Assembly (NCBI RefSeq): GCF_963853765.1
Contig: NC_088861.1
Coordinates: 44,702,001 to 44,766,000 of the forward strand
Reading direction: 5' to 3'
DNA: 64,000 nt
Source of the DNA: Magallana gigas
Lineage: Eukaryota
In this document: positions 16,880-42,886 of the stretch, piece by piece
Layout of the letters: every line of letters begins with the position of its first letter
Numbering within the stretch: the first letter of the stretch is position 1
The notes under the pieces: generated by a model
Databases searched by the model: none
The model's input: only the letters and a program-made list of their open reading frames with translations
Told to the model about the DNA's origin: nothing
Translations under genes and position numbers: made by a program

Positions 16880-16972
16880 TTAAGTTCCCAGGCTGGGGCT
16901 AGCTGTGGACCCTTTGCTTTTCCCTTTGGTTTTGACACTGGCCAACTGCTTCATCAGATCTCGATTCTTTGT
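16880..16972 (-). CDS. FAM76: FAM76 coding exon 9 (stop codon)
   Basis: [30 protein letters not shown]. Confidence 0.9.
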   Translation of the reverse strand, partial: TKNRDLMKQLASVKTKGKSKGSTASPSLGT

Positions 16973-19900
16973 CTGAAAAAAAAAATCATTTTTCTTGCTC
17001 TTAGATATAGTCAACAAAATATTATACTGAACACTGCCCTGAAATATAAGCAATATTTGGGTCAAGTTAAAAAATCAAGAGGATTTTACAACTTAAGCCC
17101 AAATATGGCAAGTATCATTTCTTTTTATCCTGCAACTCATTTACAAAATTACCCCATCTCATCATTATCAAGAAATAATAGTAGATCTTAGCATTTAATA
17201 TTTTTTACAATGGTGAAAACAATCAATACAACCTTTGAATACACCCTTTATTAATTATTGGCTTTGAAAAGTAAGATGTTTGGTCATGTTTAAATCAATC
17301 CCCCTTTCCTCTTGGACTCTGCTTGAGTACACATGTACTGACCTGGAGAGCGTCCAGGGACTCGGTGTGCTGTTTCAGCTGAGTCTGCTGCTTTATGCGA
17401 TACTCCTTCTCCATCTCGTAGAGCTGAGCCTTCAACTCGGTGATCTACAAACAGACAGGCACCATTATATACAGACATACACCATAACACATACAGACAC
17501 CATTACATGTACAGACATACACCATTACATATACAGACACACAACATTACATACAGATATACACTATTACATATATAGACATAGACCATTACATGTACAG
17601 ATATACACCATTACATGTACAGACATACAACATTACATATACAGACATACAACATTACAGACAGATATACACTATTACATATATAGACATACACCATTAC
17701 ATGTACAGATATACACCATTACATGTACAGATATACACCATTACATATACAGACATACAACATTACATATACAGACATACACCATTACATATACAGATAA
17801 ACATCATTACATATACATACATCCACCATTACATATACAGACACCATTACATATACAGATATACACCATTACATATACAGACATACAACATTACATATAC
17901 AGACATACAACATTACATACAGACATATACCATTACATTTACAGACACCATTACATACAGACATACACCATTACATACACAGACATGCACCATTACATAT
18001 ACAGACATACACCATTACATATACAGACATGAACCATTACATATACAGACATACACCATTACATATACAGACATACACCATTACATATACAGACATACAA
18101 CATTACATATACAGACATACACCATTACATATACAGATAAACATCATTACATATACATACAGACACCATTACATATACAGACACCATTACATATACAGAT
18201 ATACACCATTACATATACAGACATACAACATTTCATATACAGACATACAACATTACATACAGACATATACCATTACATTTACAGACACCATTACATACAG
18301 ACATACACCATTACATACACAGACATGCACCATTACATATACAGACATACACCATTACATATACAGACATGAACCATTACATATACAGACATACACCATT
18401 ACATATACAGACATGCACCATTACATATACAGACATACACCATTACATATACAGACATGCACCATTACATATACAGACATGCACCATTACATATACAGGC
18501 ATACACCATTACATATACAGACATACACCATTACATATACAGACATGCACCATTACATATACAGACATACAACATTACATACAGACTTTTACACTTCATT
18601 TTTTGAGCCTCTCTAGTGGCAGCCATTTTTTTGTCTGTTGTTGATATTAAAAAAGCTGTAACCTTAACACTTTCACCTTTTGTCTCTCTAAAGCATTTTT
18701 TTACTTTCTATCTGTTGTTGATTATTTTTGTAAAGAGAAGTTTACACTCACATAACATGTAACGGTTACACTTTACCTTTTTGTCTCTCTCCAGCAGCTG
18801 TTGATCTTTGAGCTGGAGCTGTTTTTTGGAGGAGTCGAGCTGCTCCTGTAGCTGTTGTAGCGCGATCAGATGTTCCGAGCTGTGGGGATCCTCAACAGGC
18901 TTGTCCAGGGCACTGGCATTCAACAGAGACAACGACATACTGCTACCAAGTCCAGAACTGTAAGAAACATACAACTATACTGATACTGAGTCATAGAAAT
19001 ATATTAGTAAGATACTGATACAAAGTCATAAAAACAGAATAACATATTGCTTCAAGGTTCAGAACAGTAGACTAACATAGAAATATACTACATGACCTAT
19101 TGAATAAAAAGTATGGATTCATAAAAACATAGAGATATGCTGCTGTCAAGCCAAAAAAAACATAACTACATACTGCTACTCTGCAGGTAATGAAAGGACA
19201 GGTGACACAAAATCATTTTCTTCTAAAAAACATTTTTTACAATAAAAATAAATCAGTTTATATCAAGTTCCTTGTTTGACTAGCATTTGATAAGAACAAA
19301 CAGCTCCATGAAAATCCCAGCTGCAGCTGATCCCAGAGTCTATAATGAGATAACAATATTGGTGTTACTTTTGGTGCTTACCTCTTGGTAGGTGTTAAAC
19401 CGTTGGCGTTATTTTTGGAGTCCATTCTGGACACCTTGTTGGGTGGGGTATCTGATGGAGTATTTGGTTCACTGGACCTACAATGAATGACATCAGAAAT
19501 CAGTCCATTTTAGACAGTAGTGTGTACATCAGAAATCCTTTAGGCCAAAACAAAATTATTGTCTGTTTGGGATTGCCTCCAAACTCATTGAAATATCCCA
19601 CGCTGATAAAATTTTATAAGCGAAAAATAAAGAATTTTTATAATCATGTTTATGAAGAACTTTATTTCTTACCAATTTTTAACTAGAAAAACTTCCAAGT
19701 TTCAAAAATAAATCCCTCCCCCTCCCTCCTGGGTCTAGAAACCTCCAGGCAGCAATTCCAATCAAACAGTTTTATGGATGGCCTTACTAACATTATCATT
19801 CTGTGTTCTTATTACCAAAACAAAAGTTCTAACATCTTAGTCAGTCACGGGCAAACTCTTACAGAGTATTGTAAAAGTTAGTTCCCTTGATCATCAATTT

Positions 19901-42600: not shown

Positions 42601-42886
42601 AATTCACATTCTATATCCATTTCCTTTTATGTCTTTGCAACAGTTAGATCAAAAGAAAAAGAAAAAGAAGTCAGTGGATCCCTCGAAGCAGAGATCAGCT
42701 TCAGCGAATGCTTACTGTCATCAAAACGGGGAAGTCGAAGTCACAACCACAATAAAAACTCGTGGCCGCTCAGCGGGTGTGGTTCATGTACGACCTTCAA
42801 GTGCCAGGGAGGTGTCGTTAAATGTGTTAAAGGACATGAAGAAATTACAGACCACTTTACGGAAAGATGATTTAACTTGGGAATAG
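24622..42886 (+). CDS. CEP57: Centrosomal protein CEP57 (translokin) family, about 502 aa
   Basis: Exons 24622-24642 (putative), 34912-35092, 35732-35908, 36960-37222, 39873-39950, 40031-40222, 41608-41816, 42130-42274 and 42644-42886 (1509 nt), all in phase. Family motifs YPTKPFIN, AVISALKNLQEKIRKLE, AETRSQLLEKQLDYMRKMV, HYRLNLAEIPFVAGKS, SHSVGANVQ, LQDEFGQMS, ELDALVTRMEGK, LKDMKKLQTTL...LTWE. Confidence 0.92.
25168..26088 (+). mobile_element. Internally deleted hAT transposon, 921 bp
   Basis: TIR CATACTTGCCAAC / GTTGGCAAGTATG; exact 8-bp TSD GAAGACAT (25160-25167 and 26089-26096); decayed transposase remnants (ALCVLCNTHLNIGFCAQNDLTK; AETLFAF.LAEHNLPFSVSDH). Confidence 0.85.
27915..28081. 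mobile_element. hAT-like MITE
   Basis: 15-bp TIR CAGGGTTGTCTCTAA / TTAGAGACAACCCTG. Flanks resemble a decayed TSD (GGCATAG versus GCATATAG). Confidence 0.65.
30147..30242 (+). CDS. CEP57: Possible alternative first coding exon of CEP57
   Basis: GCCATC-ATG context, 32 open codons (MTEIMDYLISQVNQGQQKFEITVSPNRQKAAK), donor AAG|gtaaga in phase 0, compatible with exon 34912. Confidence 0.5.
31621..31676 (-). pseudogene. tRNA-Lys(TTT)-derived relic or SINE head
   Basis: Minus strand TAGCTCAGTCGGTCAAGC...TTTTTAA...GGTCCAGAGTTCGAG resembles the tRNA-Lys A box, anticodon arm and B box. Acceptor stem is lost. Confidence 0.55.
34912..35092 (+). CDS. CEP57: CEP57 exon
   Basis: TFSPHMM...YHEYPTKPFINDDYRFDPAKPVKPFPENNRT. 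Confidence 0.9.
35732..35908 (+). CDS. CEP57: CEP57 exon
   Basis: AVISALKNLQEKIRKLEVER...SKHTQ. Confidence 0.92.
35891..36650. repeat. 32-34-bp minisatellite containing the exon end and splice donor
   Basis: Unit about TGTCCAAACACACACAAG|GTAAAAACTGCAAAAC, about 22-23 copies. Confidence 0.95.
36960..37222 (+). CDS. CEP57: CEP57 exon
   Basis: ELETQLTAAETRSQLLEKQLDYMRKMV...LRLTASQTLSE. Confidence 0.92.
39873..39950 (+). CDS. CEP57: CEP57 exon
   Basis: NKIRELEEKLQEEKHRRRLIEEKAVE. Confidence 0.9.
40031..40222 (+). CDS. CEP57: CEP57 exon
   Basis: QESVAESARIL...HYRLNLAEIPFVAGK. Confidence 0.92.
40320..40650 (+). mobile_element. Large-hairpin interspersed element
   Basis: Palindrome 40320-40430 with apex TTATAATCCGCAAAGTGGATTATAA; distal AACCAATCA...ACAACCAGAA. 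Confidence 0.6.
40791..41368. mobile_element. Kolobok-like non-autonomous element
   Basis: TTAA|AGGAATATATATG...AAATTGGCTCCC mirrored by GGGGGCCAAATTTG...CATATATAGTTCT; the right TTAA is degenerate. Confidence 0.6.
41608..41816 (+). CDS. CEP57: CEP57 exon
   Basis: SLTASHSVGANVQRVLSLMK...LQLQDEFGQMS. Confidence 0.92.
42130..42274 (+). CDS. CEP57: CEP57 exon
   Basis: EHQELSHEI...ELDALVTRMEGKSQQISKIRRHQNK. Confidence 0.92.
42644..42886 (+). CDS. CEP57: CEP57 last coding exon
   Basis: LDQKKKK...LKDMKKLQTTLRKDDLTWE*. Confidence 0.92.
   Translation, partial: LDQKKKKKKSVDPSKQRSASANAYCHQNGEVEVTTTIKTRGRSAGVVHVRPSSAREVSLNVLKDMKKLQTTLRKDDLTWE

What the first reader, a model, noticed from the sequence alone, without database searches (positions are those of the whole stretch)
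16880..42886. FAM76-CEP57 head-to-head pair, as in human
Seen: FAM76 (-) and CEP57 (+) are divergent neighbours, with putative start codons 361 bp apart. Known: human FAM76B and CEP57 are divergent neighbours at 11q21. Inference: microsynteny kept since the protostome-deuterostome ancestor, probably held by a shared promoter. That would link a nuclear regulator to a centrosomal microtubule-anchoring protein.
Basis: partly seen in the sequence, partly recalled or inferred. Interest (0 to 1): 0.7.

Follow-up and report, generated by a model that had tools for sequence, protein, structure and literature searches.

The report
Oyster FAM76–CEP57 head-to-head gene pair
In this Pacific-oyster window the genes FAM76 and CEP57 really do sit back to back on a short shared promoter, as they do in mammals. 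The arrangement is old within molluscs, but it was missing in all five other invertebrate lineages I could check, so descent from the bilaterian ancestor is likely rather than proven.

Summary
FAM76 lies on the minus strand (CDS 24260 down to 16880) and CEP57 on the plus strand (CDS 24622 to 42886). Exactly 361 bases separate their start codons. RNA contigs place the two 5' ends no more than about 217 bp apart. Both genes are single-copy in this genome, which is Magallana gigas or a near-identical oyster.

CEP57's first coding exon has only 7 codons, followed by a 10.3-kb intron. The same 7-codon exon occurs in the pearl oyster and in abalone, 349 to 444 nt from the FAM76 ATG. It comes with a conserved ETS / CCAAT / E2F-like promoter layout.

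A mammal (cat) has the same divergent pair. Starfish, acorn worm, amphioxus, the annelid Capitella and the sponge Sycon do not, within 10 kb.

Neighbourhood evidence still favours common ancestry:
- RTN4IP1 sits next to FAM76 in Capitella and amphioxus, and 33 kb from FAM76 in the oyster.
- Human 6q21 keeps RTN4IP1, SESN1 and CEP57L1 together.
- Sestrin is on the same oyster chromosome.

I put common ancestry at about 0.7. This is an ordinary new example of a known class, conserved bidirectional gene pairs. The proposed functional link between the two proteins is untested.

The parts
16880..24260 (-). FAM76 coding region, 9 coding exons, 409 aa. Exons: 24180-24260, 23218-23282, 22801-22861, 22016-22171, 20327-20721, 19382-19477, 18777-18957, 17343-17444, 16880-16972 (includes the stop).
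   Evidence: Pfam PF16046 on exon pieces. Spliced RNA joints for the first four introns. The model has all GT-AG introns and translates 409/409 identical to the Magallana gigas FAM76 record P0175. Intron phases are shared with seven other animals.
24261..24337 (-). FAM76 5' UTR, up to the outermost RNA contig ends (approximate TSS).
   Evidence: RNA contigs of two studies end at 24337 (X9) and 24332 (X1) (table 8).
24338..24554 (.). Shared intergenic promoter between the two outermost transcript ends, no more than 217 bp. AT-rich, no CpG island.
   Evidence: Contig ends. Composition. Motif content and cross-mollusc alignment.
24337..24363 (+). Two exact ETS-type motifs CCGGAAGT (24337-24344 and 24356-24363), at or just upstream of the FAM76 5' end.
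   Evidence: Three matches in the 64-kb window against 0.37 expected, two of them here. A TTCCG core sits at the equivalent place in Pinctada and Haliotis.
24496..24502 (+). CCAAT box (CCAATGA), about 120 nt upstream of the CEP57 ATG.
   Evidence: A CCAAT box lies at the same distance (118-126 nt) in oyster, Pinctada and both Haliotis loci.
24526..24545 (+). Conserved 20-mer GGCGGGAGTTTCCCGGATGT: an E2F-like GGCGGGA plus an ETS core CCGGATG, 10-30 nt upstream of the CEP57 transcript end.
   Evidence: Identical in Pinctada apart from one A/T position. Unique in the 564-Mb genome at up to 1 mismatch. An ETS core lies 75-83 nt from the CEP57 ATG in all four mollusc loci. Reading it as transcription-factor sites is inference.
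24555..24642 (+). CEP57 exon 1. CDS 24622-24642 = MEESYNL (7 codons), phase-0 donor AACTTG|gtaagt.
   Evidence: RNA contig X9 lies on 24555-24642, with 8 further letters running past the donor. The X1 contig (depth 170) ends at about the same place. Homologous 7-codon exons: Pinctada MAESFNM, Haliotis MDDSNSK. The Haliotis annotated CDS start coincides with that exon.
24643..34911 (+). CEP57 intron 1 (10,269 nt), with repeat or transposon-like sequence.
   Evidence: GT...AG ends and frame continuity. No Pfam domain in its ORFs. Multi-copy, both-strand RNA depth at 24900-25900. The joint itself was not observed.
34912..42886 (+). CEP57 exons 2-9 (inferred model; 502 aa in total). Exons: 34912-35092, 35732-35908, 36960-37222, 39873-39950, 40031-40222, 41608-41816, 42130-42274, 42644-42886 (includes the stop).
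   Evidence: Cep57_CLD on the 35.7 and 36.9 kb pieces and Cep57_MT_bd on the 41.5 and 42.1 kb pieces. Exon 2 is 69% identical to Pinctada exon 2. Splice sites were chosen by frame and consensus, giving one open frame with all GT-AG introns. No RNA check was made for these exons. Alternative sites exist at the exon 3 and exon 4 boundaries.

Best explanation
This is a genuine bidirectional gene pair in a Magallana (Crassostrea) oyster. Single-copy FAM76 (minus strand) and single-copy CEP57 (plus strand) are transcribed away from each other from one short AT-rich, TATA-less promoter region of about 200 bp.

Shown:
- The FAM76 side of the promoter has two CCGGAAGT motifs at its start site.
- The CEP57 side has a CCAAT box and a unique composite element, GGCGGGAGTTTCCCGGATGT.
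- CEP57 begins with a 7-codon exon, followed by a 10-kb intron.
- The pair, the mini-exon and the spacing of the ETS core and CCAAT box are shared by oyster, pearl oyster and abalone. The unit therefore predates the bivalve-gastropod split.
- A mammal has the same divergent pair.

Inferred: the pair most likely descends from one ancestral bilaterian neighbourhood, RTN4IP1 -> <- FAM76 <-> CEP57, with sestrin on the same chromosome. The short shared promoter would have protected it from breakage in molluscs and vertebrates. It would then have been broken independently in ambulacrarians, amphioxus and Capitella. The likely reason for retention is joint proliferation-linked transcription (ETS / NF-Y / E2F type) from a promoter that cannot be split without damaging one gene. 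It need not reflect any physical or pathway link between the two proteins.
For: Identity and single copy.

Spacing and transcripts.

Mollusc conservation:
- Pinctada and two Haliotis assemblies have FAM76 head-to-head with a Cep57_CLD+MT_bd gene.
- The 7-codon exon 1 lies 349, 444 and 440 nt from the FAM76 ATG in those loci.
- Pinctada exon 2 lacks any Met, so translation must start in exon 1.
- The 20-mer is conserved between oyster and Pinctada and unique in the oyster genome.
- The ETS core and CCAAT box sit at fixed distances in all four mollusc loci.

Mammal and bird: cat FAM76B-CEP57 is divergent. Papers report the human CEP57-FAM76B-MTMR2 locus and a chicken 1-Mb bin holding SESN3, FAM76B, CEP57 and MTMR2.

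Ancestral neighbourhood:
- An RTN4IP1-like gene lies tail-to-tail beside FAM76 in Capitella and B. belcheri.
- In the oyster it lies 33 kb beyond the FAM76 stop, in the same convergent orientation.
- Human 6q21 holds RTN4IP1 about 2 Mb from SESN1 and CEP57L1.
- Human 11q21 holds SESN3 next to FAM76B.
- A bird gene model fuses Sestrin-2 with FAM76.
- Oyster sestrin is on the same chromosome.

Cell-cycle link: human CEP57 and FAM76B are both listed as p53-p21-RB/E2F-controlled genes.

The class of 5'-5' conserved pairs with bidirectional promoters is established.
Against: - Within 10 kb the pair is absent in all five non-mollusc invertebrates that could be read: Asterias (zf-C2H2 neighbour), Saccoglossus (sulfotransferase), B. 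belcheri (transposon and unknown genes), Capitella (Arf GTPase) and Sycon (kinesin). Common ancestry therefore needs at least three independent losses.
- Cnidarians, cephalopods, arthropods and other amphioxus assemblies could not be read.
- The human RTN4IP1-CEP57L1 and oyster sestrin linkages are megabase-scale. Conserved chromosome-level synteny alone would produce them.
- The 24642->34912 splice was not seen directly.
- Co-expression was not measured. Only two contig-depth ratios are available.
- The motif assignments are consensus matches, not binding data.
- No mollusc-mammal sequence similarity was looked for or seen in the promoter. The cat interval is a 1.6-kb CpG-rich region with a different composition.
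Confidence: 0.7

Rival explanations
1. Convergence. FAM76 and CEP57 lay on the same ancestral chromosome, perhaps near each other, but were not adjacent. They became head-to-head neighbours independently in the stem of conchiferan molluscs and in the stem of vertebrates. The resemblance to human is then a coincidence of the kind expected a few times per genome comparison.
For: All five sampled lineages between or outside molluscs and vertebrates lack the adjacency, each with a different gene upstream of FAM76. The pair fails the criterion of linkage in at least four lineages used to define conserved ancestral microsyntenic pairs. The mollusc and cat promoters differ in composition. The first-stage scan read many windows, so some chance matches to human gene order are expected.
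Against: It needs two independent gains of the same adjacency, the same orientation and a sub-kilobase to 1.6-kb spacing. Each arrangement has been stable since at least the bivalve-gastropod split. On the vertebrate side the sestrin/FAM76/CEP57 paralogy pattern suggests stability since before the vertebrate genome duplications (inference). The oyster locus also keeps RTN4IP1 nearby, as annelid and amphioxus do. The oyster region therefore looks conservative rather than rearranged.
Confidence: 0.25
2. The short exon at 24555-24642 is not part of CEP57. It is a promoter-upstream or non-coding transcript of the FAM76 promoter. CEP57 would then start at the ATG at 34927 from its own promoter about 10 kb away, so the genes would be divergent neighbours without a shared promoter.
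For: The 24642->34912 joint was not observed. Exon 2 contains an in-frame ATG ATG at 34927. Two poly-A runs gave no reads on 24500-24699. The Pinctada GenBank model starts CEP57 elsewhere, at L001:4824.
Against: RNA contigs from two studies stop exactly at the predicted GT donor. The exon is phase 0 and in frame with exon 2, with the intron's own TAG just before the acceptor. The same 7-codon exon with a GT donor is present in Pinctada and Haliotis. The annotated Haliotis CEP57 CDS begins exactly at that exon in two assemblies. Pinctada exon 2 has no Met, yet its first residues (TYSPQ against oyster TFSPH) are conserved as protein.
Confidence: 0.05

Closest known systems
Conserved ancestral microsyntenic pairs (CAMPs) of the co-regulated 5'-5' type, e.g. 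HSPE1-HSPD1 (Irimia et al. 2012, PMC3514665)
   Same: Two unrelated genes in divergent orientation, with a very short intergenic region (<1 kb in molluscs), the same orientation in distant phyla, and repeated lineage-specific losses.
   Different: CAMPs were defined by linkage in at least 4 of 11 major lineages. Here only 2 lineages are positive and 5 are negative within 10 kb. Co-expression was not measured. I could not check whether the pair is in that paper's supplementary list, because it is not held.
Human FAM76B-CEP57 locus at 11q21
   Same: Same two gene families and same divergent order, shown here in cat and as one human locus in the literature. Both human genes are listed as RB-E2F pathway targets. 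All eight FAM76 introns are shared in position and phase among the invertebrates modelled, and the first four match approximately in cat.
   Different: Vertebrates have two paralogues of each gene (FAM76A/B, CEP57/CEP57L1), and only one combination is still paired. The cat interval is a 1.6-kb CpG-rich region (GC 62%), while the oyster interval is a 361-nt AT-rich one (GC 28%). The human head-to-head orientation itself rests on my own knowledge plus the cat locus. It was not read from human sequence here.
ETS/NF-Y/E2F-type bidirectional promoters of mammalian housekeeping and cell-cycle genes
   Same: TATA-less, transcript 5' ends about 200 bp apart, an ETS motif at one start site, and a CCAAT box and E2F-like GGCGGGA near the other.
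   Different: No CpG island. The factor assignments are consensus matches only. Nothing is known about binding in molluscs.

Membership tests
FAM76 (Pfam PF16046) | Colinear match to the FAM76 profile above the curated cut-off | tested here: met
   Five exon pieces match profile positions 1-248 in order, four of them above the 28.5-bit cut-off; exon 4 scores 92.4 bits. The full model is 409/409 identical to the M. gigas FAM76 protein.
FAM76 (Pfam PF16046) | One-to-one orthology: single copy in this genome, and nearest relatives are FAM76A/B of other animals | tested here: met
   PF16046 hits only this locus in the 564-Mb genome. Searches return FAM76A/B across Metazoa. Eight intron positions and phases are shared.
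CEP57 / CEP57L1 family | N-terminal Cep57_CLD (PF14073) plus C-terminal Cep57_MT_bd (PF06657) in one gene | tested here: met
   Cep57_CLD scores 56.7 and 72.7 bits (cut-off 28). Cep57_MT_bd scores 36.5 bits on one exon (cut-off 31.3) and 24.1 bits on the preceding exon. Both lie on the plus strand in order, within one 502-aa open model.
CEP57 / CEP57L1 family | Single copy; reciprocal best hit to vertebrate CEP57 | tested here: inconclusive
   PF14073 hits only this locus genome-wide. No full-length protein search could be run, because the spliced protein has no reference and exon-sized queries cannot reach full-length proteins.
Bidirectional-promoter gene pair | Divergent orientation with transcript 5' ends less than 1 kb apart and no gene between them | tested here: met
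   Outermost RNA contig ends are at 24337 and 24555, so 217 bp between them. The start codons are 361 nt apart.
Bidirectional-promoter gene pair | Correlated expression, or one fragment driving both directions | not testable with these tools
   Only two RNA contig sets show both genes at similar depth: FAM76 about 200 against CEP57 170, and 60 against 40. That is not a measure of co-expression.
Conserved ancestral microsyntenic pair (Irimia et al. 2012) | [quoted passage not shown] | tested here: not met
   Positive in molluscs (and the window) and in a mammal. Negative within 10 kb in echinoderm, hemichordate, cephalochordate, annelid and sponge. The 10-kb flank sees only 1-3 genes, so the four-intervening-gene rule was not fully tested. 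Cnidarians, arthropods and others were not sampled.

The most novel reading that the evidence does not exclude
RTN4IP1 -> <- FAM76 <-> CEP57 is a surviving piece of the bilaterian ancestor's gene order. The oyster would be the only sampled animal that keeps all three genes within 65 kb. On this reading the FAM76-CEP57 bidirectional promoter is an ETS/NF-Y/E2F-type cell-cycle module more than 550 million years old. Its persistence would reflect a real functional coupling of FAM76, a nuclear protein of poorly known role, with centrosome and spindle biology.
Probability: 0.15. Interest if true: 0.5.

Novelty: new member of a known kind. Interest (0 to 1): 0.3.

Why it matters
If ancestral, this adds one well-documented case to the roughly 600 known deep microsyntenic pairs. 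It is a case where the constraint can be narrowed to about 200 bp carrying a unique conserved 20-mer, which makes it easy to test with reporters. It also corrects gene models. CEP57 in molluscs starts with a 7-codon exon beside FAM76, which the Pinctada annotation appears to miss. Finally, it offers a modest lead on FAM76, whose function is poorly known: it is transcribed from the same short promoter as a centrosomal gene, and in human both are listed as RB-E2F targets. None of this is surprising to a comparative genomicist. The patchy distribution is a reminder that a match between two species does not show ancestry.

Tried and rejected
Synteny look-ups that failed: Octopus bimaculoides, Branchiostoma lanceolatum and Acropora cervicornis were not on record. 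The Acropora millepora/muricata protein returned only a 2.5-kb transcript contig. So there are no cephalopod or cnidarian data, and all 12 look-ups are spent.

Unannotated CEP57 in the negative loci: tblastn with the oyster CEP57 exon peptides against all fetched flanks found only Pinctada exon 2. ORFs upstream of amphioxus FAM76 are repeat- or retroelement-like.

Literature:
- No paper holds FAM76B + CEP57 + 'bidirectional'.
- No paper holds FAM76 + microsynteny.
- CEP57 + microsynteny gave only an unrelated sponge genome paper.
- The supplement of Irimia et al. 2012 is not held.

A gene hidden in CEP57 intron 1: ten ORFs gave no credible Pfam hit.

Extended synteny with human inside the window (MTMR2, sestrin): no such ORFs in the window. 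Sestrin is 44.6 Mb away on the same chromosome.

Exact spliced model of cat FAM76B: it failed because the stored protein is an aberrant isoform. The cat CEP57 annotated 5' boundary is not an ATG, so the cat start-codon distance is not claimed.

Not done:
- A full-length CEP57 protein search, because the spliced sequence has no reference and must not be typed.
- Complex prediction, because no binding claim is made.
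Full report
**What is in the window.** The window is low-GC eukaryotic DNA. Minus-strand exon pieces between 24.3 and 18.7 kb match Pfam FAM76 (PF16046) colinearly. Plus-strand pieces between 35.7 and 42.3 kb match Cep57_CLD and Cep57_MT_bd.

A whole-genome search places the window at contig C9:44,702,001-44,766,000 of a 564-Mb assembly. Both families hit nothing outside this locus, so each gene is single-copy. My nine-exon FAM76 model has all GT-AG introns and translates 409/409 identical to 'protein FAM76A isoform X2 [Magallana gigas]'. That record's contig length, 50,364,239, equals the length of C9. The organism is therefore the Pacific oyster or something indistinguishable from it. 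Public RNA runs that hold the stretch are labelled oyster.

**The observation.** The FAM76 ATG is at 24260 on the minus strand. The ATG proposed for CEP57 is at 24622 on the plus strand.

RNA evidence comes:
- Four FAM76 introns appear as spliced joints with minus-strand GT..AG ends.
- FAM76 exon 1 contigs end at 24332 and 24337.
- On the other side, an RNA contig of one study lies on 24555-24642 and continues for 8 letters beyond the predicted donor (AACTTG|gtaagt).
- A contig from a second study (depth 170) ends at about the same place.

The two transcript 5' ends are thus no more than about 217 bp apart.

**Is the 7-codon exon really the start of CEP57?** The next recognisable CEP57 exon is 10.3 kb away, so this was the weak point of the observation. 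I could not see the 24642->34912 joint, because read laying is limited to 6 kb here and allows one call. Four indirect lines support it:

1. Exon 1 (MEESYNL) ends in phase 0. The acceptor ...tgtag|ACATTT at 34912 is in frame with the rest of the protein, and the intron's own TAG sits just upstream of it.
2. Pinctada imbricata has ATGGCAGAATCATTTAATATG|GTGTGT (MAESFNM) 349 nt from its FAM76 ATG. Two Haliotis assemblies have ATGGATGATTCTAATTCCAAA|GTAAGT (MDDSNSK) 444 and 440 nt away.
3. In both Haliotis assemblies the annotated CEP57 coding range ends exactly at that ATG.
4. Pinctada exon 2 (TYSPQITTSGKSPGKRPLY...) has no methionine, yet it is conserved with oyster exon 2 from its first residue (TFSPHMMGGKSPTKRPLY...). 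Translation must therefore start upstream.

Choosing frame-consistent consensus splice sites gives a nine-exon CEP57 model of 502 aa with all GT-AG introns. Only exon 1 has RNA support. No Pfam-recognisable gene lies in intron 1. Its 24.9-25.9 kb part behaves as multi-copy repeat in RNA data.

**The promoter.** The interval is AT-rich (GC 28%) with no CpG island.

- Two exact CCGGAAGT motifs lie at 24337-24363, at the FAM76 5' end. The window has three such motifs against 0.37 expected.
- About 10-30 nt upstream of the CEP57 transcript end lies GGCGGGAGTTTCCCGGATGT (24526-24545).
- This 20-mer is identical in Pinctada except for one A/T position, inside otherwise poorly alignable sequence. It is unique in the 564-Mb oyster genome at up to one mismatch.
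- In oyster, Pinctada and both Haliotis loci, an ETS core (CCGGATG) lies 75-83 nt from the CEP57 ATG and a CCAAT box lies 118-126 nt from it.

The promoter layout, not only the gene order, is therefore conserved across bivalves and a gastropod. Calling these ETS, NF-Y and E2F sites is inference from consensus sequences. It fits the listing of both human genes among p53-p21-RB/E2F-controlled genes.

**Survey of other animals.** A profile-free search with the best FAM76 exon, plus two full-length searches, gave named FAM76 proteins across Metazoa. I looked up their genomic context with 10-kb flanks.

| Species | Group | Upstream neighbour of FAM76 |
|---|---|---|
| Pinctada imbricata | bivalve | Cep57_CLD+MT_bd gene, head-to-head |
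| Haliotis rubra and a second Haliotis assembly | gastropod | Cep57_CLD+MT_bd gene, head-to-head |
| Prionailurus iriomotensis (cat), FAM76B | mammal | Cep57_CLD+MT_bd gene, head-to-head |
| Asterias rubens | echinoderm | zf-C2H2 gene |
| Saccoglossus kowalevskii | hemichordate | sulfotransferase |
| Capitella teleta | annelid | Arf GTPase |
| Sycon ciliatum | sponge | kinesin |
| Branchiostoma belcheri | cephalochordate | unknown genes and a retroelement |

tblastn with oyster CEP57 peptides found nothing in the negative flanks. Four look-ups failed (Octopus, B. lanceolatum and two Acropora proteins). Cephalopods and cnidarians therefore remain unsampled.

The literature lists human CEP57-FAM76B-MTMR2 as one locus. 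It also places chicken SESN3, FAM76B, CEP57 and MTMR2 in one 1-Mb bin.

At the 10-kb scale that is what I find: five of five non-mollusc invertebrates lack it. The pair also fails the four-lineage criterion used to define conserved ancestral microsyntenic pairs. A two-phylum match could be chance, because the scan reads many windows and genes on the same ancestral chromosome have a non-trivial chance of ending up adjacent.

Against pure chance stand three things: the same orientation, the short spacing, and the long stability in each lineage. In molluscs the arrangement has been stable since at least the bivalve-gastropod split.

**Neighbourhood evidence.** Following the other flank of FAM76 gave an unexpected link.

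- In Capitella and in amphioxus, the gene tail-to-tail with FAM76 is a zinc-type alcohol-dehydrogenase-fold gene. The two are homologous to each other. The best, and for one of the two exon pieces tested the only, solved-structure match of the Capitella gene is human RTN4IP1, PDB 2VN8.
- The oyster has one RTN4IP1-like gene at C9:44,680,946-44,685,904 on the plus strand. That is about 33 kb beyond the FAM76 stop and convergent with it. Lineage-specific genes, including a TIR/Death-domain gene, lie in between.
- In human, RTN4IP1 lies on 6q21 about 2 Mb from SESN1 and CEP57L1. SESN3 is the neighbour of FAM76B on 11q21. A bird gene model fuses Sestrin-2 with FAM76, which implies SESN2-FAM76A adjacency.
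- Oyster sestrin is single-copy and on the same chromosome, 44.6 Mb away.

The simplest reading is an ancestral block, RTN4IP1 -> <- FAM76 <-> CEP57, with sestrin on the same chromosome. After the vertebrate genome duplications it would have been partitioned three ways:
- 11q21 kept FAM76B, CEP57 and SESN3.
- 6q21 kept RTN4IP1, CEP57L1 and SESN1.
- 1p35 kept FAM76A and SESN2.

This is inference. The megabase-scale links would also follow from conserved chromosome-level synteny alone. The 1p35 location of FAM76A and SESN2 is from my own knowledge. I therefore put common ancestry at about 0.7 and convergence at about 0.25.

**Orthology and gene structure.** All eight oyster FAM76 introns lie at aa/phase 27/0, 48/2, 69/0, 121/0, 252/2, 284/2, 345/0 and 379/0. 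They correspond in order and phase to those of Haliotis, Asterias, Saccoglossus and amphioxus. Pinctada and Capitella have one intron fewer. Cat FAM76B has its first four exons at matching positions by tblastn.

**Comparison with what is known, and novelty.** Divergent, closely spaced, deeply conserved pairs that share a bidirectional promoter are an established class. HSPE1-HSPD1 is the textbook case. Repeated lineage-specific loss is also described for that class. I found no paper that mentions this particular pair in an evolutionary context, and I could not read the relevant supplementary lists. This is a new, reasonably well-documented member of a known kind, with a patchy distribution. 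The suggestion that it 'links a nuclear regulator to a centrosomal protein' goes beyond the evidence. Shared transcription from an indivisible promoter is enough to explain retention.

**Limits.**
- No cnidarian, cephalopod or arthropod context.
- Flanks are only 10 kb.
- No direct read across CEP57 intron 1.
- No expression correlation.
- CEP57 exons 2-9 are modelled, not observed.

Noticed in passing
L006:13562-15076 (Capitella), L010:19352-25555 (B. belcheri); oyster G000:C9:44,680,946-44,685,904 (L024/L026): An RTN4IP1-like gene lies tail-to-tail directly beside FAM76 in an annelid and in amphioxus. In the oyster it sits about 33 kb beyond the FAM76 stop, in the same convergent orientation. 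This is a second possible ancient microsynteny, and it ties in with human 6q21 (RTN4IP1 ... SESN1, CEP57L1).
   Followed up: yes
window 35891-36649: A 34-nt minisatellite (22.7 copies, 88% matches) starts at the end of my CEP57 exon 3. Its unit contains the donor context CACAAG|GTAAAAAC, so the 5' splice site is repeated many times. I did not test which donor is used.
   Followed up: partly
window 17451-18581: A 22-nt tandem repeat (53 copies, with a higher-order 340-nt period) fills much of FAM76 intron 7. It produces long spurious His/Tyr/Thr-rich ORFs on the plus strand.
   Followed up: partly
window 21100-21900 and 24900-25900: Very high RNA depth on both strands, with many variant letters, inversions and loose ends. 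These look like multi-copy transposon-like repeats inside FAM76 intron 4 and CEP57 intron 1, not single-copy exons.
   Followed up: partly
L001:4824 versus L001:9631-9651 (Pinctada imbricata): The GenBank CEP57 model of Pinctada (577 aa) starts at 4824. The conserved 7-codon first exon lies at 9631-9651, only 349 nt from the FAM76 ATG. The deposited model probably has a wrong first exon.
   Followed up: partly
G000:C9:101,783-104,318: The single oyster sestrin (PF04636) gene is on the same chromosome as FAM76-CEP57, but 44.6 Mb away. In vertebrates each sestrin paralogue sits near a FAM76 or CEP57 paralogue.
   Followed up: partly
They may be lineage-specific insertions into an older neighbourhood. 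They were not analysed.
   Followed up: no
window 47709-47716: The only other exact CCGGAAGT in the window. It may mark another promoter downstream of CEP57.
   Followed up: no
protein P0283 (Turdus rufiventris, 701 aa): A bird gene model named Sestrin-2 carries both PA26 (sestrin) and FAM76 domains. It is probably a fusion artefact of two adjacent genes (SESN2 and FAM76A).
   Followed up: no
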